Part shown: positions 35,105 through 60,800 of the stretch, in pieces
Layout: each line of letters begins with the position of its first letter
Numbering within the stretch: position 1 is the stretch's first letter
Assembly (NCBI GenBank): GCA_048013815.1
Contig: CM106585.1
Location: forward strand, 10,850,001-10,914,000
Direction: 5' to 3'
DNA: 64,000 bases
DNA from: Setoptus koraiensis
Taxonomy: Eukaryota; Animalia; Arthropoda
Made by a program: the position numbers and the translations under genes
Notes under the pieces: model-generated
Seen by the model: only the letters and a program-made list of their open reading frames with translations
Databases searched by the model: none
What the model was told of the DNA's origin: nothing

Positions 35105-35764
35105 CCGGTGTTTATGATACCCAGGGCATGGATTATGATGGCAACATGGGCCTTGTCTCTGGTCGGAGCACGCGAATTGCCGGATAATGTCAATGAAATC
35201 ACATTACTAGACTGCAACAGCTCTTTACAACTGTCTCTGGGCCCCTATACATTGCATGGCACTCGTTAAAATACAATGGCAATTTCTCATTGCAGGATTG
35301 AAATGTCAATTATCTATGAATATCAATCTTACCAAGTAACAGTAGCAATTTCATTGGGCCCTCATTGTTTACCAGAGGATTACAGCCATTTGTTATCAAG
35401 CAGAAAGAAATCTTGTCGCATGGGATATTTTCCCTGCTCCCAAGTAGAGTGTGTACAGTTTAAATTTGTTTGTGACGGTCAGCACCATTGCTCTGATGGT
35501 TCGGACGAAGGCCGGAGGTGCCACTCGTCGTGTGCTACCAGCATTGGTCCGCATCCGACTTGTGGCCATAGAGAAAGTGGCCGTTCAGCCAGTTTCACTG
35601 TATTTTAGCTGTATTGTTCCGACGGATATGTGCAATCGCATTTCCGGTAACTGCTCAACGATAGTACAAGATCCAGTCAACTTAACTAGCTTGGCGCTGG
35701 CGCCTTATTTATTATTTATTATTATGGCCATCGTGGGCACTAACGGCAGAACCGAGAGAGCACG
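35105..35764 (+). pseudogene. Scrambled, frameshifted fragments of the LDLR-family gene at 53097-55340
   Basis: 35105-35259 matches 54310-54467; 35357-35543 matches 53805-53991; 35599-35764 matches 54487-54655. By-eye identity is about 88-96%, with indels. Confidence 0.92.
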
Positions 35765-45932: not shown

Positions 45933-46584
45933 CACTTTACTACACGACTACCACTACTTCTACCGTACCACCAACCAACTAATAAAGGTCGCCATCTCCT
46001 GTCATTCCAGGTAATTATTGAGTTTTTTATTTTATTCTTTCCAACACACTAATAGTGGCAATGTAATCAGCCGGCTTCTTTCATCATGTCACGCCCAAAA
46101 CTGGGACATCAATATGATTTATTGTATAATGCTTGTGATGAGGCCATTTATTTGGATCTTATAATATGAGCAGGTGAATAACATTTTCACTATTGTATCT
46201 ATAGAATTTTTAGATACGAATTTACCGTAGCGACAACTGTTGGACTCGTATTAAACCAGTAGTGCTTGTTAACAAGAACCTATCACTGGTAATTGAGACC
46301 AAACATTGAATTTGGTATTAAAGATTTTTTTTTCTTTTCAAATATTGCTCTTGTAGATGCCACTGAGAGATCTTTATCGCGTCAAACATAAAAAGATGAA
46401 GAGCGACGGCAAGATCAAGGGAAATTTAATTTCTGTATTAATTGATGCTTGTCGAAGTTATCATCAATCTCGCATTTCAATCAACCTCGATCGTGGTGGT
46501 CTCGATAACGGTCCAACTATGCCATTTATTTCAACTATTCCAGGGATAAAGCATACAACTCATCACGATAGTAATGAAGAGTGA
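45933..46584 (+). pseudogene. Possible spliced gene or pseudogene of unknown product (putative exons 45933-46010, 46056-46173, 46214-46288, 46357-46584; one in-frame TAA at 46162)
   Basis: GT-AG junctions join in frame into a chain ending in the 75-aa ORF ...HHDSNEE*. No family recognised, and two of the introns are only 40-45 nt. Confidence 0.25.
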
Positions 46585-47200
46585 TTCATCAGTGTCACTG
46601 TCCGCTCGTTTATTGAGTTGATGTCATTGTAGCAATACTACAAAATTAAAACAATAATAAATAATAATAACTAACAAGATCCCTCCAATGATATTGTCAA
46701 CCCAAATGACTTGTTTCGGTTGTTAGTGGAATTGTTTTGTGTAACTAATTAAATTTTGAATTTTAAGAAAGTTCGACTAACTTTTTTTCGAACATTTTTC
46801 TTTGAATTTGGCGCGGATTGTGAGCGAGAAAATGCGCACAAGGCGTGTTTGGCACGGAAGCAGCATGAAACCAATGCGGTGTGTTGTTGGTTCATTGAGT
46901 TCGAAAAAATTTCACAAAGAGTGCATCTGTACAGCCAAATCGTGATTGGTCAAAAAAGCTTTTATCCGCCCTTACATTTAATAACATTGTTGTCAGCTCG
47001 TTTATAATTGAAATAATACTGAATTGACCCAACTTTATCACTTTCTGTCGCTTGGCTTCACCTAAATATCAATTATGACACAACCACAAACCCAAAGAGC
47101 CGCCCAATCAGGGGCTGACCGTAACTTCAAGGATAAAGACAAGCCAAATCAAATTAGACAAAGTAACATGAGCGCTGCCAAGGCGGTTGCCGATGCCGTT
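46560..47200 (+). repeat. Segmental duplication, copy 1: upstream ORF end + CCT4 promoter/5'UTR + first ~42 codons
   Basis: Collinear similarity to 48712-49354 throughout (e.g. TTTATTGAGTTGATGTCATTGTAGCAATACTACA, GAATGCGCACAAGGCGT-type block, ATATCAATTATGACACAA). Confidence 0.93.
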
Positions 47201-48694
47201 AGAACTAGCCTGGGACCCCGTGGTATGGACAAGATGATTCAAGCGGCAAACGGTGATGTCACTATCACAAACGATGGTGCCACCATTCTTAAACAAATCG
47301 AGGTATTACATCCAGCCGCCAAGATGTTGGTAGAGGTTAGCCAGGCTCAAGATGTTGACGCCGGCGATGGCACAACCAGTGTGGTTGTTTTAGCCGGTTC
47401 TCTATTGGATGGCGCTCAGAAACTTCTTCAAAAAGGCATACATCCAACTATCATTAGTGATGCATTTCAAGAGGCGGCAAAAGCCTGCCATGAATCATTG
47501 GTGAACAAATTAGCCATAGAGGTCGATCTGAAAGATTTAGATTCACTGCAAAGAGTTGCTTCGACCTCTCTAAACAGTAAGGTAGTCTCGCAGCATTCTT
47601 CCCTCTTGGCACCCATTGCAGTGCAAGCTGTTTTAAAAATCAGACAAACGTTCGCTGGTAAAGATAATGTCGACTTGAGGAATATCAGAGTCATCAAAAA
47701 ACTCGGAGGCACTTTAGACGATACTCAACTCATAGATGGACTAGTATTAGATTCTAAATTCTGCAGCGACTTTGGCTCAAAACGTGTCGAAAAAGCCAAA
47801 ATAGGTCTCATTCAATTCTGTATATCACCACCGAAGACAGACATGGATAATCAAGTCGTCATCACAGATTATACCCAAATGGATCGTGTGCTTCGCGAAG
47901 AAAGGAATTATATACTCAACATAGTCAAGCAGATCAAGAAGGCCGGTTGCAACGTACTTTTGGTCCAAAAATCCATACTTAGAGACGCTTTAACCGACTT
48001 GGCTCTACATTTTCTCGGTAAAACCAAAATAGCTGTCGTCAAAGATGTCGAACGTGAAGATGTAGAATTTATATGCAAAACTCTCGGCTGCAGACCAATA
48101 GCTAGCCTAGATCACTTTACACCAGAGCACTTGGTATCGGCAGATCTTGTTGAGGAGGTAACAACGGCCAAATATATCAAGATAACAGGAATTCAACCAA
48201 ATCCTGTTAACATTGCCAATAAAACGGTCAATATACTTATCAGAGGCTCCAACAAGTTGGTCATGGAGGAGGCGGAGCGTTCGCTGCATGATGCCTTGTG
48301 CGTTGTCCGTTGCTTGGTCAAATCGCCTTATCTCATACCAGGTGGTGGTGCGCCCGAAATCCACTTGTCGCATCACCTAAGTAAACTGAGTCAATCGATG
48401 ATAGGTTTACAAGCGGTTTGTTTCCGCGCCTTTGCCGAGGCTTTAGAAATCATACCCTACACACTGGCCGAGAACGCCGGTCTCAATCCGATTGGAACTA
48501 TCACTGAATTGAGGCAAAAGCATGCAAATGGCGAGAAAAATTTCGGCATTAATATTAGAAAAGGAACCGTCACCGATATGCTAGGCGAGAATGTCTTGCA
48601 TCCCTTATTGGTAGCGACATCAGCAGTCACACTGGCAGCTGAGACAGCACGATCTATTCTCAAAATCGATGATCTAATAAACTCAGTGCGTTGA
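47075..48694 (+). CDS. CCT4: T-complex protein 1 subunit delta, intronless, 539 aa
   Basis: [69 protein letters not shown]-like, ARSILKIDD; CCT-delta-specific motifs. Confidence 0.97.
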
Positions 48695-48711
48695 GTAATG
48701 AGGTATATAAT

Positions 48712-49354
48712 TCATCAAGATAGTGATGAGGAGTGAGTCATCAGTGTCACTGTTTAACCTTTATCTGCTTGTTTATTGAGTTGATGTCATTGTAGCAATA
48801 CTACATAATTCAAACAATAATAAATAATAACTAACAAGATCCTCTCGAAGATATCGTCAACCTTCATGATGGTGTTTGTGTTAGCGGCATCTTTTTGTGA
48901 AGTCAGTTAAATTGGAAATCAAATTATTTGTTTATGAGTAAGTTCGTCGAACTCATTTTCGAACATTTCTCTTTGAATTTTGCGCGGATTATGAGCGAGA
49001 GAATGCGCACAAGGCGTATTTCGCGCGGAAGTTGCATGAAACCAATTTTTTTGTTTGTTGTTGGTTCATTGGATTCGAAAAATGTTATACAACGAGCGAA
49101 TCAGAACAGCCAAATCGTGATCGGTCGCATAGCCTTTATCAGTTTAGACATTTAATATGATTGTTGCCAACCCATTTTGAACTGAATCAACTAAACCACA
49201 TCACTTTCTTTCTCTCAGCCTCACTTAGATATCAATTATGACACAAGCACAAACCCAAGGAGCTACCCAATCAGGTGACCGTAACTTGGATGATAAGAGC
49301 GAGCCAAATCAACAAAGTAACACGAGCGCTACCAAGAATGTGGCCGACACCTTT
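48712..49354 (+). repeat. Segmental duplication, copy 2: supplies the CCT4 3' flank, the AsnRS promoter and the AsnRS N-terminus
   Basis: Matches 46560-47200; begins 18 nt after the CCT4 stop. Confidence 0.93.
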
Positions 49355-50404
49355 GCAACAATTAAATTAAGAGACGCTGCAAATTATCGTAATCAACGTG
49401 TTCTAGTTCAAGGCTGGGCGCATCGTATCAGACGTCAAGGAAAGAAATTGATGTTCATCATATTACGTGATGGTACCGGCTTCTTACAATGTGTATTATC
49501 GAAAGGCCTATGTGAAACTCACGACAGCCAGGTTTTGCAAACAGAGGCCACAGTCAAAATATATGGAACACTTAAAGCTCTTCCCGAAGGGAAACAAGCT
49601 CCGGGAGGTCATGAGCTGCAGGCGGACGATTGGAAGTTAATCGGGAATGCACCAGCTGGAGGCATCGAAAACGCTCTGAATGAAGAATCTGCTGTTGACG
49701 TGCAACTCGACCAAAGACATCTGATGCTTAGAGGAGAGAACCTTAGTCGTATCATGCTTTTCAGATCTATCTTGACTAAGCATTTGAGACTCCATTATTT
49801 CGACAGGGGCTTTGTTGAGATCACTCCACCGACATTGGTTACCGGTCAAGTGGAAGGAGGCTCTACATTATTTAAACTTAACTTCTTCGGCGAGGAGGCC
49901 TATCTCACTCAGTCATCTCAACTGTATCTCGAGTCAGCGCTACCAGCACTTGGCGACGTCTTTTGCATAGCTCAATCCTATAGAGCTGAACAATCAAGAA
50001 CACGAAGACATCTAGCTGAATACACTCACGTAGAAGCTGAGAGACCATTTATCTCATTCGATGAGTTACTCGACACCATAGAAGATCTGATTTGCGATCT
50101 AATAGATAGAGTTATGAATGATCCAGTCGCCTCCAAAATTGTCAAGGAATTGAATCCTGACTTCGTCGTACCTAAAAAGCCATTCAAAAGGATGCATTAT
50201 GCTCAGGCAATCGAATACTTGAAAGAAAATGATATCACCAAAGAAAATGGAGAATTCTATCAATTCGGTGAAGATATACCTGAGATGCCCGAAAGGAAGA
50301 TGACCGATAAAATTAATGAACCTATTATGCTAACAAGATTTCCAGCTGGCATAAAGGCTTTCTACATGTCCAAGTGTAGCGACGACGAAAGAGTCACTGA
50401 ATCG
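49238..50404 (+). CDS. NARS1: Cytoplasmic asparaginyl-tRNA synthetase, exon 1 (CCT4-derived N-terminus, OB fold, catalytic core)
   Basis: QGWAHRIRRQGKKLMFIILRDGTGFLQC, EGGSTLFKLNFFGEEAYLTQSSQLYLE, YRAEQSRTRRHLAEYTHVEAE; donor TCG|gtaagt. Confidence 0.96.
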
Positions 50405-50502
50405 GTAAGTTATATCGCAAAATACATTAATATTCGATAAAACATGACTTTGTGCCCCAATGTGAAGCTATAATTATTATTACCAATTATTTATTTCAAC
50501 AG

Positions 50503-50766
50503 GTTGATGTCCTTCTGCCGGGTGTAGGTGAGATCGTGGGTGGATCTATGAGAATCTGGGACCACGATCAACTTGTCAATGCTTATAAACGTGAAAATAT
50601 CGATCCAAAGCCTTACTACTGGTACACAGATCAAAGAATGTATGGTACCTGCCCTCACGGTGGTTACGGTCTTGGATTGGAGAGGTTCATAACATACATT
50701 CTCAACAGACATCATATCAGGGATAGTGTAATATATCCACGATATGTTGGCAGATGTAAACCTTAG
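50503..50766 (+). CDS. NARS1: Asparaginyl-tRNA synthetase, exon 2 (motif 3); total 476 aa
   Basis: caacag|GTTGAT; [17 protein letters not shown]...[12 protein letters not shown]...[10 protein letters not shown]; 98-nt phase-0 intron. Confidence 0.96.
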
Positions 50767-50937
50767 TTTACTAGCTAAATAATATCGGTATAGTGACACA
50801 AAAAGTTGATATACACATACTCCTCCTTGTGATTGATTACGGGCACTGTTCTATTTAATATTTTAGTTTGTTCACTTATCGAATAATTTTTCATTCGTAG
50901 TGATAGTAGTAAACATGTATTTTATTTTTACATTGAT

Positions 50938-52278
50938 TTATGTGCAGTCTGGTATCACTGGCCCTTCGTCTTCTATAATTTTATTGAACGTAGGATTATC
51001 CTCGTCGTGTTTTTCTACTAGCAACTGTAGATTTAATCGATCTTTATTGGTAGCATAAAAAGCTCTGACACTATCCGCATTTTTGGTACGCACCACCTCT
51101 GATATTGCATCAAAGTCAGTACCATAGCGCCTGATACCTTGGATGATGAGCTCAGACTCTTCAGGGGCCCAAATTCTGTTATGCTTGATTGGGGGCAATA
51201 TTTCATTCAGATTCAATGACTGACTTAATTCTTCTATCTGGCGCGCGATTGGTTGTATCTTATCCTTGATTTGTGAAACAACTTGTTTATCTGTTTGGAT
51301 TTTAGACTTTAGATTCTGTATTTTGGAATCTATTTCTTTGAGAATAATGTCGCAAGTCTGCGGACCTCCATCTACAATTCTTTGGATATCTTGGCGAGTA
51401 AAGAGCAAATTTTTCTGCATATAAAAGCAATCTCCAGTTTCTAGCTTTTCTGTCTTGGTGATTCCAGAGCGTTTGACATCTTCATAACATGCAACACAAT
51501 AATCTTTGTCTCCTGATAAGGTTATAATTGGGGCTAATATTGTACACTCATTTTTATACATGACTCTCAATTGTTTCTTGCATAAACAACATACTCCATC
51601 ATATTCCTCGTTGGAGGCGCTGCTATCAGGACTAGCCTCTCCAGCGTTGGCGTTGGATCGTTCTTTATCTCCGTTGGACTTATTTTCATCGTTGTTTTCC
51701 TCTTCTTCCTCGTCGGAAGGCACCTCACTACCTGGCTGCTTCCTCAGAGCAAAACGTCTTGTTTGTCTTTCCATGAGACTAGCTCTTGTGCGAGTTTTCT
51801 TCCAAGAATAATAATATTTGATTAGGTTGGCCATAGATTTGTCAGGTAGCATCTGTTTTATCTTCGAAAATTGTTTTTCATGGAATTGATATGCTTGTTC
51901 GAAGAGAACTTTATCTTCAACAGACCACTCATCTGGATATGGTACGAAATTCGGGAGGTCGGCATAGGCTCTATTTAGATCAAACTTATGCCAGCTCAGC
52001 ATGCCTAGGGCCTGTTCCATGTTGTAAGAGTATTTCTCTTTGGCTTTGGCTATGTATTCCTCAAGTATATGCTCAGGTATACTATTTTGGGGCGACCAAA
52101 CCTTAACGGCTTTCTCTTCCTCATATCGCTGTGGCGCCGGCGAAAAAGCTATGAATTGGGGTATGGGCGCTTGGTAATTTCGTCCTATTCTCATTCCATG
52201 ATCGTCCTTAAAGTCATCACCCGCGGTTGTCTGGCTGATGGCACGATGATTTACTAGGTGCTGATGACTGCCTGGCAT
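50938..52278 (-). CDS. RCOR: REST corepressor (CoREST/RCOR family), intronless, 446 aa
   Basis: ELM2 (MRIGRNYQAPIP...), SANT1 (EWSVEDKVLFEQAYQFH...YYYSWKKTR), coiled-coil linker, SANT2 (WAPEESELIIQGIRRYGTDF). Confidence 0.93.
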   Translation of the reverse strand: MPGSHQHLVNHRAISQTTAGDDFKDDHGMRIGRNYQAPIPQFIAFSPAPQRYEEEKAVKVWSPQNSIPEHILEEYIAKAKEKYSYNMEQALGMLSWHKFDLNRAYADLPNFVPYPDEWSVEDKVLFEQAYQFHEKQFSKIKQMLPDKSMANLIKYYYSWKKTRTRASLMERQTRRFALRKQPGSEVPSDEEEEENNDENKSNGDKERSNANAGEASPDSSASNEEYDGVCCLCKKQLRVMYKNECTILAPIITLSGDKDYCVACYEDVKRSGITKTEKLETGDCFYMQKNLLFTRQDIQRIVDGGPQTCDIILKEIDSKIQNLKSKIQTDKQVVSQIKDKIQPIARQIEELSQSLNLNEILPPIKHNRIWAPEESELIIQGIRRYGTDFDAISEVVRTKNADSVRAFYATNKDRLNLQLLVEKHDEDNPTFNKIIEDEGPVIPDCT

Positions 52279-53096: not shown

Positions 53097-55340
53097 ATGA
53101 CAGTAACATCAAAAACAATGTCCAAGTTATTATTATCAGTTTTTTTATTAATACAGTTGTCGTCGGTATTCGCCATCAACGAAGATTGTCCCCTTAATCA
53201 GTTTTCATGCCAAGACGGAACCTGCGTACCTCAACTATGGGTTTGTGACAGACAGCAGGACTGTGATAACGGATTTGACGAACAATCGTGTAATTCTCAC
53301 AATTGTAGCGTCGGCCACCAATTCTGTAATGATAAACACACGTGCATACCCGAGAGTTGGTTCTGCGATGGACATAAGGACTGCCCCGGCAATGAGGACG
53401 AGCTCAATTGTCACGAGAACATTTGTAAGGAAACTGAGTTTCGTTGTGACGGCAGAGTTTGTATCGATTTGCGACTCCGTTGTGACGGAATTAGACATTG
53501 CCACGACGGACAGGACGAAAAAAACTGTACTATCGCTGCCGAATCGAAAATGGCCAGGAAGTGCACAACGGACATGATAAAGTGCCCCTCGGATCAACAT
53601 TGCATCTACAACAGGGAGGTTTGCGACAATCACATCGATTGCGAAGATGGATCGGATGAGGCCAACTGCGGACACAAAAAATGCGAGACCTACGAGTTTG
53701 CGTGCCAAAATTCCAGCTCAAATTCGAAGAATGCCAAAAAATGTATTCCTCTAACGTGGCAATGTGACAACGAGAACGACTGTGGCGACTGGAGTGACGA
53801 ATTAGGCCTTCATTGTTTACCAGAGGATTACAGCCATTTCTTATCAAGCAGAAAGAAATCTTGTCGCATGGGATATTTTCCCTGCTCCCAAGGGGAGTGT
53901 ATACAGTTTAAATTTGTTTGTGACGGTCAGCACCATTGTTCTGATGGTTCGGACGAAGGCCGGAGGTGCGACTCGTCGTGTGCTACAAGCAACGGTGGTT
54001 GTGCTCAAATCTGCCGATCTACACCCTACGGACCATCCTGCGATTGTCGTGAAGGATATATGCTCAATGATGACGGAAAGACCTGTGACGATATCGACGA
54101 ATGTACCCAGTTCGGATTGTGCAGTCATTTTTGTTTCAACACCCGTGGTAGTTATAAATGCAAATGTGCCGAGGGATATGAAATATCACCGACAAACAAA
54201 CACCACTGCAAAGCAGTCAAGAGGTCAGAGGCGGCCATCTATTTCATGCTTCCCGACAAAATAATCTCTTCAGGTATTGTCAAATACGAGGAGCAACTTC
54301 TCATCAGCCCCGGTGTTTATGATATCAAAGGGATGGATTATGATCGCAACATGGGCCTTGTCTTCTGGTCGGAGCACGCGAATCGCCGGATAATGTCAAT
54401 GAAGTTAAAAGATGGTAGACTGGAACAGCTCTTTACAACTGTCTCTGGGCCCTTATACATTGCATGGGATTGGGTGAGAAAGAACATGTATTTCAGCGAT
54501 TCCGACGGATACGTGCATGTGTGCAATCGCATTTCCGGTAACTGCTCAATGATAGTACAAGACCCAGTCAACTTAACTAGCTTGGCGCTGGCGCCTAAGC
54601 ACGGTTTTATTTTCTTGGCCATCGTGGGCACTAATGGCAGGATCGAGAGAGCACGACTCGATGGTAGCGATAGGAGTATAATAGTAGCCGCAAAAATTCA
54701 CTGGCCGCGGCAAATCGTCGTCGATCAAATAATGCGGCGCATCTATTGGACCGATAGCCAGCTGGAGGAAATTTGCAGCTGCGATTATGACGGAAACCAG
54801 CGAATCAGTCTGATCTCTTTTGGACTGCCAAGACCGGTCGGTTTGGCACTGTTTGAGGACTCCCTCTTCGCGTCTAGTCTAGAAAGCAATATGTCTGAAA
54901 CTATTGATAAATTCAGTGGAACCGATAGAAAGCCCTTCAACATCCCCTTTAAATCAGAGGTAATCCGGGTCGTGCACCGATCGTTACAACCAGCTGGGCT
55001 GGAAAATTGCACCACTTCTTGCGAGCATCTTTGCATCGCTATGATGGGTCAAGACAGCTGTCTTTGCCCACCGGGAATGATGCTTGCGGATGATCTACGA
55101 AGTTGCCGTGCAGCCGATCCCATTCCGGATGATAAAACCTGGATTTGGCTCATTATCATTCTTTTGTTTATAACTGTCATCGGACTGCTCACGTTGCTGA
55201 TAATCGTCATGATGTATAAACAAGGGACATTGCCCAAGCCCCACTTTAACGGCATTGATATAAGTTCTATATCAGTAACCTTCACACCTGGCTTCAGCAA
55301 CCACGGAAAAGACGACGAAGAAATATTGATAAACGGCTAA
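53097..55340 (+). CDS. LDL-receptor family type I membrane protein (lipophorin/vitellogenin receptor-like), intronless, 747 aa
   Basis: Signal peptide, 6 LDLa repeats (C..DC.DGSDE), EGF-A/EGF-B (DIDEC), YWTD propeller (IYWTD), EGF-C, TM helix, tail of about 40 aa. Confidence 0.93.
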   Translation: MTVTSKTMSKLLLSVFLLIQLSSVFAINEDCPLNQFSCQDGTCVPQLWVCDRQQDCDNGFDEQSCNSHNCSVGHQFCNDKHTCIPESWFCDGHKDCPGNEDELNCHENICKETEFRCDGRVCIDLRLRCDGIRHCHDGQDEKNCTIAAESKMARKCTTDMIKCPSDQHCIYNREVCDNHIDCEDGSDEANCGHKKCETYEFACQNSSSNSKNAKKCIPLTWQCDNENDCGDWSDELGLHCLPEDYSHFLSSRKKSCRMGYFPCSQGECIQFKFVCDGQHHCSDGSDEGRRCDSSCATSNGGCAQICRSTPYGPSCDCREGYMLNDDGKTCDDIDECTQFGLCSHFCFNTRGSYKCKCAEGYEISPTNKHHCKAVKRSEAAIYFMLPDKIISSGIVKYEEQLLISPGVYDIKGMDYDRNMGLVFWSEHANRRIMSMKLKDGRLEQLFTTVSGPLYIAWDWVRKNMYFSDSDGYVHVCNRISGNCSMIVQDPVNLTSLALAPKHGFIFLAIVGTNGRIERARLDGSDRSIIVAAKIHWPRQIVVDQIMRRIYWTDSQLEEICSCDYDGNQRISLISFGLPRPVGLALFEDSLFASSLESNMSETIDKFSGTDRKPFNIPFKSEVIRVVHRSLQPAGLENCTTSCEHLCIAMMGQDSCLCPPGMMLADDLRSCRAADPIPDDKTWIWLIIILLFITVIGLLTLLIIVMMYKQGTLPKPHFNGIDISSISVTFTPGFSNHGKDDEEILING

Positions 55341-60050: not shown

Positions 60051-60260
60051 GGCTTGGATACAGATGAACCAATATTACAGATAGGCCAAACATTCTACAA
60101 GGCTAATTTTCACAATACTATTGGAACAAGCCTAATTTTCGAATGTGACAAAGAGCAGAGACTCAAATACCTCACCAAGTCTGATAAGAAAATTATAATG
60201 AAAAGAGTGTTCCTGAAGCCCAAGGAAGATCGACAGTCTAAACAGGAAGAATCTCACTAG
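60051..60260 (+). CDS. GTF3C6: TFIIIC subunit 6-like, exon 2
   Basis: ctcag|GGCTTG; GLDTDEPILQIG...NTIGTSLIFE...KYLTKSDKKIIMKR matches the TFIIIC_sub6 pattern (GIDTERPILQVD...DTLGTCVIFE). Confidence 0.82.
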   Translation, partial: GLDTDEPILQIGQTFYKANFHNTIGTSLIFECDKEQRLKYLTKSDKKIIMKRVFLKPKEDRQSKQEESH

Positions 60261-60271
60261 ATTTGTTTATT

Positions 60272-60445
60272 ATGACTGCAACCAAACTTCGTCAGAGGTA
60301 TCCTCCTGCCTTTAAACGGTGTATGCCGGAGGCCATCGAGTACGGTCGCTGCGTTTCGGCTGCCTTAGATCTGAAACATAAAGTCTGCGATAAGGAGTTT
60401 ATAGCGCTCAAAAAATGTTTTCTCAAAGCAGTAGGATCCAAGTAA
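60272..60445 (+). CDS. NDUFAF8: Complex I assembly factor NDUFAF8-like, twin CX9C, 57 aa
   Basis: YPPAFKRCMPEAIEYGRCV...CDKEFIALKKCF, similar to human FPERLAACGAEAAAYGRCV...CAREFEALRSCF; AATAAA at 60455. Confidence 0.85.
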   Translation: MTATKLRQRYPPAFKRCMPEAIEYGRCVSAALDLKHKVCDKEFIALKKCFLKAVGSK

Positions 60446-60530: not shown

Positions 60531-60800
60531 AGAGACTCAAAGGCCTGACCAAGTCAGATCAGAAAATTATAATAAAACCAAAGAAAAATCGACAAAGTAA
60601 ACGGAAACAGGAACAATCTCACTAGATTTGTTTATTATGACTTCGACCAAACTTAAACAGAGGTATCCTCCTACCTTTAAACGGTGTTTGCGAGAAGCCA
60701 TTGAGTCGGTGCGTTTCGGCTGCCATAGATCTGAAACTTAGTCTTCGACAAAGAGTTTATAGCGCTCAAGAAATGTTTTCTCAAGGCAGTGGGATATTGT
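60531..60800 (+). pseudogene. Duplicated GTF3C6 3' remnant plus frameshifted NDUFAF8 pseudogene (ATG at 60637)
   Basis: Collinear with 60157-60440; 5-nt deletion after GAG (about 60705) causes a frameshift and early TAG. Confidence 0.9.

What the first reader, a model, noticed from the sequence alone, without database searches (positions are those of the whole stretch)
48712..50766. Chimeric gene: asparaginyl-tRNA synthetase carries a duplicated CCT4 promoter and CCT4-derived N-terminus in place of its own extension
Seen: about 640 bp (46560-47200) spanning the CCT4 upstream region, 5'UTR and first 42 codons is repeated at 48712-49354 and runs in frame into the AsnRS OB fold. CCT4 [42 protein letters not shown] aligns with AsnRS MTQAQTQGATQSG-DRNLDDKSEPNQ--QSNTSATKNVADTF (27 of 42 columns identical). 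Both indels in the coding part are multiples of 3. Known: this segment is conserved CCT4 sequence, so CCT4 is the donor; metazoan cytoplasmic AsnRS normally has an N-terminal extension of about 110 aa, which is absent here (476 aa total). Inference: an essential enzyme was re-promotered and re-headed by a local duplication, tying its expression to the chaperonin gene. The captured helix might also affect folding or assembly.
Basis: partly seen in the sequence, partly recalled or inferred. Interest (0 to 1): 0.85.

Follow-up and report, generated by a model that had tools for sequence, protein, structure and literature searches.

The report
AsnRS gene with borrowed CCT4 front
In a tiny plant-feeding (eriophyoid) mite, the essential asparagine-loading enzyme gene starts with a transcribed copy of the upstream region, mRNA leader and first ~40 codons of its neighbour, the chaperonin gene CCT4. 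The usual long animal N-terminal domain was probably already gone before this capture.

Summary
Window 46546-47205 (CCT4 upstream region, 5'UTR, first ~43 codons) recurs at 48698-49359 at about 80% identity (blastn E 6e-132). The second copy starts 4 nt after the CCT4 stop and runs in frame into the AsnRS OB fold.

It is not an assembly artefact. Contigs from two other DNA runs span both junctions, and an independent contig from a sister species (L001) has the same layout. Four more distant eriophyoids keep CCT4 next to AsnRS but have no repeat.

Contigs from two RNA-derived runs skip the AsnRS intron. They start at 49087/49104, and 49104 is the exact homologue of the CCT4 mRNA start at 46929. 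They run unbroken through the ATG at 49238 into the enzyme, with no upstream exon.

CCT4 is the donor, and the promoter, 5'UTR and start codon were replaced. However, all sampled eriophyoid AsnRS already lack the PF20917 N-terminal domain, so the capture displaced at most a short head. The captured peptide is predicted disordered and evolves near-neutrally.

The copies group by species, which implies gene conversion or repeated capture. This scan has unchecked notes of similar 5'-module captures elsewhere in this genome.

The parts
46546..47205 (+). Donor copy: CCT4 upstream region, 5'UTR and first ~43 codons
   Evidence: blastn 46546-47205 vs 48698-49359, E 6e-132.
46608..46642 (+). 35-nt stretch identical in both copies (the other is at about 48771-48805). 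It contains the palindrome TTGTAG-N5-CTACAA and sits in the best-conserved block of the repeat (94%).
   Evidence: block D4; a 35-nt contig fits two places at double depth; the motif occurs only in the two copies.
46929..47074 (+). CCT4 5'UTR. The RNA-derived contigs of both runs begin at 46929.
   Evidence: records 12 and 17.
47075..48694 (+). CCT4 (TCP-1 delta) coding sequence, single exon, 539 aa
   Evidence: (PF00118, E 1e-162). dN/dS 0.01 against the sister species.
48695..48828 (+). CCT4 3'UTR. It lies inside the left end of copy 2 and includes an AATAAA near 48819.
   Evidence: CCT4 RNA contigs end at 48750 (X9) and 48828 (X7). Sequence.
48698..49359 (+). Recipient copy: duplicated CCT4 5' module, now the AsnRS upstream region, 5'UTR and head
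49087..49237 (+). AsnRS 5'UTR. RNA-derived contigs start at 49087 (X9) and 49104 (X7). 49104 = 46929 + 2175, the exact homologue of the CCT4 mRNA start.
   Evidence: records 14 and 18. Gapless block D6.
49157..49180 (+). 7-codon upstream ORF in the AsnRS 5'UTR. The start codon is absent at the homologous position in the CCT4 copy and in both copies of the sister species.
   Evidence: Read from the sequence and the alignments.
49238..49360 (+). CCT4-derived head of AsnRS (41 codons), immediately before the IKLRD start of the OB fold
   Evidence: pLDDT about 27.
49238..50404 (+). AsnRS exon 1 (389 codons): head, OB fold (PF01336) and most of the class II core (PF00152)
50405..50502 (+). AsnRS intron (98 nt, GT..AG)
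   Evidence: the joint skipping 98 nt is seen in X9 and X7 and not in the DNA runs X2 and X3.
50503..50766 (+). AsnRS exon 2 (87 codons plus stop): end of the class II core with motif 3
   Evidence: PF00152 positions 224-306.

Best explanation
This is a real, expressed chimeric gene in an eriophyoid mite.

Ancestral state. CCT4 lay directly upstream of cytoplasmic AsnRS on the same strand, 335-420 bp apart. The AsnRS already lacked the eukaryotic N-terminal domain and began with a short head.

The event. In the lineage leading to this species and its sister species, a ~660-bp copy of the CCT4 5' module (upstream region, transcription start, 146-nt 5'UTR, start codon, about 40 codons) came to occupy the whole space between the CCT4 stop and the first residues of the AsnRS OB fold. 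It was fused in frame. It replaced the AsnRS promoter, 5'UTR, start codon and short head.

How it works now.
- The left ~130 nt of the copy serve as the CCT4 3'UTR.
- The middle drives AsnRS transcription from the homologous start site.
- The captured peptide is carried as a disordered, nearly neutrally evolving tail whose reading frame is kept because it supplies the start codon.

Later history. The two copies have since been homogenised within each species, by gene conversion or renewed copying.

Shown and inferred.
- Shown: the repeat, its polarity, its presence in two species and absence in four, and the mRNA structure.
- Inferred: the molecular route (duplication plus deletion, or template switching), a single origin, and co-regulation with CCT4.
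For: - Repeat and frame.
- Donor polarity: the CCT4 head is conserved in six eriophyoid CCT4 genes, and outgroup AsnRS heads are unrelated.
- Synteny: CCT4 followed by AsnRS in W, L001, L002, L005, L006 (Fragariocoptes setiger) and L007. The repeat is found only in W and L001.
- Transcripts: in X9 and X7 the intron is skipped. AsnRS contigs start at 49087/49104 and run through ATG 49238 into the OB fold. CCT4 contigs run 46929-48750/48828. No contig covers 48829-49086, and no other joint is seen.
- Assembly: DNA contigs from two other samples span both junctions, and so does an independent sister-species contig.
- Enzyme under constraint: dN/dS 0.04 for the AsnRS body. All columns invariant across 20 AsnRS are kept.
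- Head unconstrained: dN 0.205 and dS 0.314 against a CCT4 head that is itself frozen (omega 0.03). pLDDT is about 27 for residues 1-36.
- Prior loss of PF20917.
- Homogenisation: 34 informative sites group the copies by species, against 5 (by gene) and 4 (third grouping). Several indels are shared by the two copies within a species. Paralogue dS in W (0.31) is below the W-to-sister dS (0.57-0.73).
Against: - The 5' ends come from assembled contigs of short-read RNA runs, not from 5'RACE or CAGE, so the start site is approximate (49087 against 49104).
- No protein-level evidence shows that the head is translated or retained.
- I could not scan the whole genome for a second, canonical NARS1.
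- The observed gene order (CCT4, then chimera, with no intact parental AsnRS) cannot arise from one simple tandem duplication, so the mechanism needs two steps or a complex event.
- No site pattern or shared indel supports orthology of the two species' AsnRS heads above noise (5 against 4 sites). The sister species' repeat is recognisable only from about 190 nt after its CCT4 stop. A single origin is therefore argued mainly from the shared fusion point.
Confidence: 0.8

Rival explanations
1. Two independent captures. This species and its sister each separately replaced the AsnRS 5' end with a copy of their own CCT4 5' module after they split. There was no single ancestral capture followed by gene conversion.
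For: The copies group by species (34:5:4 informative sites, and indels shared within species). Distance-based branch lengths that I worked out by hand from the identities place both AsnRS copies on their own species' CCT4 lineage after the split. The coding indels differ between the two AsnRS heads. The left boundary differs by about 85-190 nt. The scan's unchecked notes suggest such captures recur in this genome.
Against: Both fusions join CCT4 codons ~38-43 in frame to the same point, directly before IKLRD of the OB fold. Neither species keeps any remnant of an older head or promoter. Once one copy exists, gene conversion between 660-bp direct repeats 2.1 kb apart is an ordinary process and explains the same pattern.
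Confidence: 0.2
2. One reading: the duplication displaced the canonical ~110-aa eukaryotic AsnRS extension in one step.
For: The W + sister clade is one of three unresolved basal eriophyoid branches. The tree alone therefore does not force the loss to predate the capture.
Against: All other sampled eriophyoid AsnRS also lack PF20917: Fragariocoptes plus 16 further tree rows, and about 40 database hits. They have only 335-420 bp between CCT4 and the AsnRS start. No N-extension coding sequence was found in any locus. This version needs three independent losses instead of one.
Confidence: 0.07
3. The head is transcribed but is not part of the working enzyme. Translation might start elsewhere, or the tail might be removed, so only the promoter and 5'UTR swap matters.
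For: The head evolves near-neutrally and is predicted disordered. A short uORF lies in the 5'UTR.
Against: There is no in-frame ATG between 49238 and codon 72, which lies inside the OB fold. All indels in the head are multiples of three in both species, whereas the non-coding part of the repeat has indels of arbitrary length. The start context is identical to that of CCT4.
Confidence: 0.1
4. Assembly artefact: a collapsed or misjoined repeat.
For: Short-read contigs break at the shared 35-mer.
Against: Contigs from two other DNA samples cross both the left boundary (46613-48800) and the head/OB junction (48776-51000). Two RNA-derived runs cross the junction as well. A different species' contig has the same structure, with its copies diverged to 68%. 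The two copies in the window differ by 20%.
Confidence: 0.01

Closest known systems
Chimeric genes created by local or tandem duplication (exon shuffling), as surveyed in Drosophila yakuba (PMC5460883, PMC4069613)
   Same: A duplicated 5' segment of one gene (promoter, UTR, first codons) is fused in frame to the body of a neighbouring gene and transcribed as one mRNA.
   Different: In those cases a single tandem duplication leaves both parental genes intact beside an extra chimera. Here the chimera is the only copy of an essential gene at this conserved locus, and the recipient's own 5' end is gone. The gene order requires a duplication plus deletion, or a complex template-switch event. The structure is fixed and shared by two species.
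Canonical metazoan cytoplasmic AsnRS (NARS1) with the appended N-terminal domain (UNE-N, human aa 1-77; PMC7424529; Pfam PF20917)
   Same: The OB-fold anticodon-binding domain and the class II catalytic core are present, at 62-78% identity to other animals' NARS1 over the aligned residues. All family-invariant columns are kept.
   Different: The appended N-terminal domain is absent, as in all sampled eriophyoids. It is replaced by a 41-residue disordered tail derived from CCT4.
Concerted evolution of nearby direct repeats by ectopic gene conversion
   Same: The paralogous copies are more alike within a species than orthologous copies are between species, including shared indels.
   Different: The repeats here are the 5' regulatory-plus-coding modules of two unrelated essential genes, not members of a gene family.
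Other 5'-module captures noted by this scan in the same genome (mt IleRS from MRPL14, RNF113A from ABCF1, three chimeras in one window)
   Same: The same kind of event: a neighbour's promoter and N-terminus is duplicated onto another gene.
   Different: These are unchecked AI notes on other loci. I did not test them.

Membership tests
Cytoplasmic asparaginyl-tRNA synthetase (class IIb, NARS1 orthologue) | OB-fold anticodon-binding domain (PF01336) | tested here: met
   residues 55-135, E 4e-15.
Cytoplasmic asparaginyl-tRNA synthetase (class IIb, NARS1 orthologue) | Class II (D, K, N) catalytic core (PF00152) with conserved motifs | tested here: met
   exon 1 covers profile positions 3-220 and exon 2 covers 224-306; all invariant columns are kept; best named hits are cytoplasmic AsnRS of mites and insects.
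Cytoplasmic asparaginyl-tRNA synthetase (class IIb, NARS1 orthologue) | Eukaryote-type appended N-terminal domain (PF20917 / UNE-N) | tested here: not met
   There is no PF20917 hit. tblastn with three mite N-extensions found nothing in the window or in six related loci. The domain is absent in all eriophyoid hits. It is an appended domain, not part of the catalytic definition.
Chimeric gene formed by one tandem duplication spanning parts of two neighbouring genes | The 5' part (promoter and first codons) is homologous to one parent and the 3' part to another, in frame | tested here: met
Chimeric gene formed by one tandem duplication spanning parts of two neighbouring genes | Transcribed as a single mRNA from the captured promoter | tested here: met
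   RNA-derived contigs run from 49087/49104 through the head into the enzyme. Their start is homologous to the CCT4 mRNA start.
Chimeric gene formed by one tandem duplication spanning parts of two neighbouring genes | Both parental genes remain intact, flanking the chimera, in the order 3'-donor parent, chimera, 5'-donor parent | tested here: not met
   The order is CCT4 (5' donor), then the chimera. No intact parental AsnRS is present in the window. The ancestral order CCT4 then AsnRS is the reverse of what a one-step model needs.
Concerted evolution by gene conversion | Paralogues group within species rather than by orthology | tested here: met
   34 against 5 against 4 informative sites; indels shared by both copies within a species; paralogue dS 0.31 is below the species dS of 0.57-0.73.
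Concerted evolution by gene conversion | Discrete conversion tracts, or polymorphism shared between copies | not testable with these tools
   This needs population data or more species of this clade. Only one relative (P0001/L001) was found.
TCP-1/CCT chaperonin domain in the AsnRS head | A foldable Cpn60_TCP1 domain (PF00118) | tested here: not met
   PF00118 starts at CCT4 residue 38, so at most about 6 residues of it were captured. The head has no Pfam hit and is predicted disordered.

The most novel reading that the evidence does not exclude
Capture of a neighbour's 5' module may be a recurrent way in which this extremely streamlined mite genome replaces promoters and start codons of essential genes, for instance after deletions erode short intergenic regions. 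If so, the resulting direct repeats are then kept alike by gene conversion, which would couple otherwise unrelated housekeeping genes (here a chaperonin subunit and a tRNA synthetase) to one regulatory sequence over evolutionary time.
Probability: 0.3. Interest if true: 0.7.

Novelty: new variant of a known kind. Interest (0 to 1): 0.55.

Why it matters
This is a clean natural case, supported at transcript level, in which the only copy at a conserved locus of an essential housekeeping gene had its promoter, 5'UTR, start codon and N-terminus replaced by a copy of its neighbour's. The result has been kept in two species.

It shows that a core translation enzyme tolerates both loss of its eukaryote-specific appended domain, across a whole mite superfamily, and an arbitrary disordered N-terminal tail.

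If the other captures noted in this genome hold up, it points to a general route of promoter turnover in highly compacted animal genomes. It also offers a natural experiment on promoter sharing and concerted evolution of regulatory DNA.

Tried and rejected
- I looked for a decayed CCT4 copy upstream of copy 1, which would indicate a former tandem CCT4 array. tblastn and blastn found nothing.
- I looked for exons encoding a PF20917-type extension in the window and six related loci. There were no hits.
- I tested whether the sister species' 190 nt after its CCT4 stop is a decayed left end of the repeat. Local alignment scores were no better than shuffles and blastn was blank.
- I tried to align CCT4 promoters across deeper eriophyoid lineages, and against ancestral AsnRS intergenic regions, to find shared motifs. 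They are not alignable beyond the W/sister pair.
- I searched the window for further copies of the palindromic motif in the best-conserved block. It occurs only in the two repeat copies.
- The bacterial-type promoter and terminator scan is irrelevant here and at chance level.
- A one-step tandem-duplication model was rejected because the gene order is wrong.
- The structure model is truncated (exon 1 only) and rests on a shallow alignment (pTM 0.52). I use it only for the disorder of the head.

Full report
**The observation**

Window 46546-47205 and 48698-49359 form a direct repeat. Ten gapless blocks of 71-94% identity share an offset of 2152-2175 nt. The MAFFT pairwise alignment gives 80% identity. 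Gapped blastn gives E 6.4e-132.

Copy 1 is the region upstream of CCT4 plus its first ~43 codons. CCT4 occupies 47075-48694, is a single exon of 539 aa, and hits PF00118 at E 1e-162. Copy 2 begins 4 nt after the CCT4 stop and runs in frame into an AsnRS.

The AsnRS gene model is exon 1 49238-50404, a 98-nt GT..AG intron, and exon 2 50503-50766, giving 476 aa. The domains are PF01336 and PF00152. The two heads share 27 of the first 42 alignment columns, and the coding indels are 3 and 6 nt. tblastn within the window gives E 2.8e-8.

**Is it real DNA?**

Laid on 46300-51000, Logan contigs of two DNA runs from other samples (X2, X3) cover 46613-48800 and 48776-51000. Between them they cross the CCT4-stop/copy-2 boundary and the head/OB-fold junction. 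They break only at the 35 nt that the copies share exactly (46608-46642), which has about double depth. An independent 10.2-kb contig from a related species (L001; its AsnRS body is 96% identical) has the same architecture, with its own copies diverged to 68%. Misassembly is excluded for practical purposes.

**Is it expressed as one gene?**

Runs X9 and X7 behave as RNA. Their contigs skip 50404-50502 at GT..AG, which the DNA runs do not. They also leave 46300-46928 and 48829-49086 uncovered.

- CCT4 contigs start at 46929 in both runs and end at 48750 or 48828. The CCT4 3'UTR is therefore the left end of copy 2.
- AsnRS contigs start at 49087 (X9) and 49104 (X7) and run without a break through ATG 49238 into the OB fold.
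- No other joint or loose end was reported.

49104 equals 46929 + 2175, the offset of the gapless block around it. The AsnRS mRNA thus starts at the nucleotide homologous to the CCT4 mRNA start. This is direct support for the 'new promoter' claim, within the limits of contig ends.

There is no in-frame ATG between 49238 and codon 72, which lies inside the OB fold, so the captured ATG must be the start. A 7-codon uORF (49157-49180) is specific to this copy.

**Who gave to whom, and when?**

All six eriophyoid loci examined have CCT4 directly upstream of AsnRS on the same strand: the window, L001, L002-4, L005, L006 (Fragariocoptes setiger) and L007. The CCT4 head motif is conserved in every CCT4. 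The AsnRS heads of the four outgroups are unrelated to it (for example MSGD...QVQQL..., or only MTS), and those loci have no repeat and 335-418 bp between the genes. So CCT4 is the donor, and the event happened in the lineage of the window species plus L001.

**The 'lost extension'**

All ~40 eriophyoid AsnRS hits lack PF20917. Halotydeus, Oppia, Tetranychus, Panonychus and other animals have it. In an IQ-TREE tree the eriophyoids are monophyletic (100/100), with three unresolved branches: Fragariocoptes, the window + P0001 pair, and 16 other rows. No N-extension is encoded in any locus. One loss in the eriophyoid ancestor is the parsimonious reading. The CCT4 head therefore replaced a short head, not the ~110-aa extension. 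Human NARS1 domain limits are taken from PMC7424529.

**What the head does**

| Comparison | Result |
|---|---|
| AsnRS body, window vs sister | dN/dS 0.04 |
| CCT4 body, window vs sister | dN/dS 0.01 |
| CCT4 head, window vs sister | dN/dS 0.03 |
| AsnRS head vs own CCT4 head, window | dN 0.205, dS 0.314 |
| AsnRS head vs own CCT4 head, sister | dN 0.31, dS 0.72 |

Because the CCT4 head is frozen, nearly all replacements fall on the AsnRS branch. That gives an omega near 1 there. This is my inference from 41 codons and is imprecise.

AlphaFold on exon 1 with a 20-sequence alignment gives pLDDT of about 27 for residues 1-36 and a confident OB fold from about residue 40. The head is best read as a tolerated disordered tail, kept in frame only because it carries the start codon. 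The functional change is in the promoter and 5'UTR.

**Concerted evolution**

In a four-way alignment of both copies from both species, 34 informative sites group the copies by species, against 5 by gene and 4 for the third grouping. Several indels are shared by the two copies of one species. Paralogue dS in the window species (0.31) is below the between-species dS (0.57-0.73).

Either the copies were homogenised after speciation (gene conversion or re-copying), or each species made its own capture. I favour a single origin plus conversion, at roughly 0.6-0.7, for two reasons. Both fusions join CCT4 codons ~38-43 to the same point before IKLRD. Neither species retains any older head. This remains unproven, because the sister species' left boundary differs and no pattern supports orthology of the heads above noise.

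**Mechanism of origin (inferred)**

A single tandem duplication cannot give the order CCT4, then chimera, without an intact parental AsnRS. Two routes fit the data:
- Tandem duplication of the unit 46546-48697, followed by an in-frame deletion of about 1.9 kb that removed the second CCT4 body, the old intergenic region and the old AsnRS head.
- A one-step replication template-switch event.

No CCT4 remnant survives elsewhere in the window.

**Context**

Published eriophyoid genome papers describe extreme streamlining. Text searches of PMC7738191 and PMC11879100 found no mention of synthetases and no description of a real chimeric gene. Chimeric genes from tandem duplications are well known in Drosophila (PMC5460883). 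This case differs in that it replaces the sole copy at the conserved locus of an essential gene.

This scan has unchecked notes of similar 5'-module captures elsewhere in the same genome: mitochondrial IleRS from MRPL14, RNF113A from ABCF1, and three chimeras in one window. It also has notes of other reduced aaRS. I did not test these.

**Verdict**

This is a new variant of a known kind. Interest is moderate to good (0.55) and would rise if the recurrence across the genome is verified.

Noticed in passing
Proteins P0001-P0040; loci L001, L002, L005, L006, L007: All sampled eriophyoid cytoplasmic AsnRS lack the eukaryotic N-terminal domain PF20917 that other mites and animals keep. This looks like a superfamily-wide loss of an appended aaRS domain.
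   Followed up: partly
window 46601-46667 and 48764-48830: This is the best-conserved block of the repeat (94%, with 35 nt identical). It holds the palindrome TTGTAG-N5-CTACAA and an AATAAA. It is also kept in both copies of the sister species. In copy 2 it coincides with the CCT4 mRNA 3' end. Its role in copy 1, about 300 nt upstream of the CCT4 start site, is unknown.
   Followed up: partly
window 49157-49180: A 7-codon upstream ORF lies in the AsnRS 5'UTR. Its start codon is absent from the homologous CCT4 5'UTR and from both copies in the sister species.
   Followed up: no
window 47563: All four runs laid (two DNA, two RNA-derived) read A where the window has G, at a third codon position in CCT4. 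This is a rare allele or a small assembly error.
   Followed up: no
window 46543-46584 and 48695-48736: The ORF 46357-46584 ends ...DSNEE-stop. Its last ~14 codons are duplicated in frame directly after the CCT4 stop (...DSDEE-stop). There is no Pfam hit and no RNA coverage at 46300-46928, so it is probably not coding.
   Followed up: partly
window 35105-35705 vs 54310-54596; 60240-60437 vs 60605-60795: Two further small non-simple local duplications (86-96% identity) lie in the same 64-kb window. Together with the CCT4/AsnRS repeat that makes three in 64 kb.
   Followed up: no
window 50938-52278 (- strand); L001, L002, L005, L007: An ELM2/SANT (CoREST-like) gene and SKP1 stay near CCT4-AsnRS across eriophyoids, but their order and orientation vary. 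This indicates small local rearrangements around a conserved CCT4-AsnRS pair.
   Followed up: no
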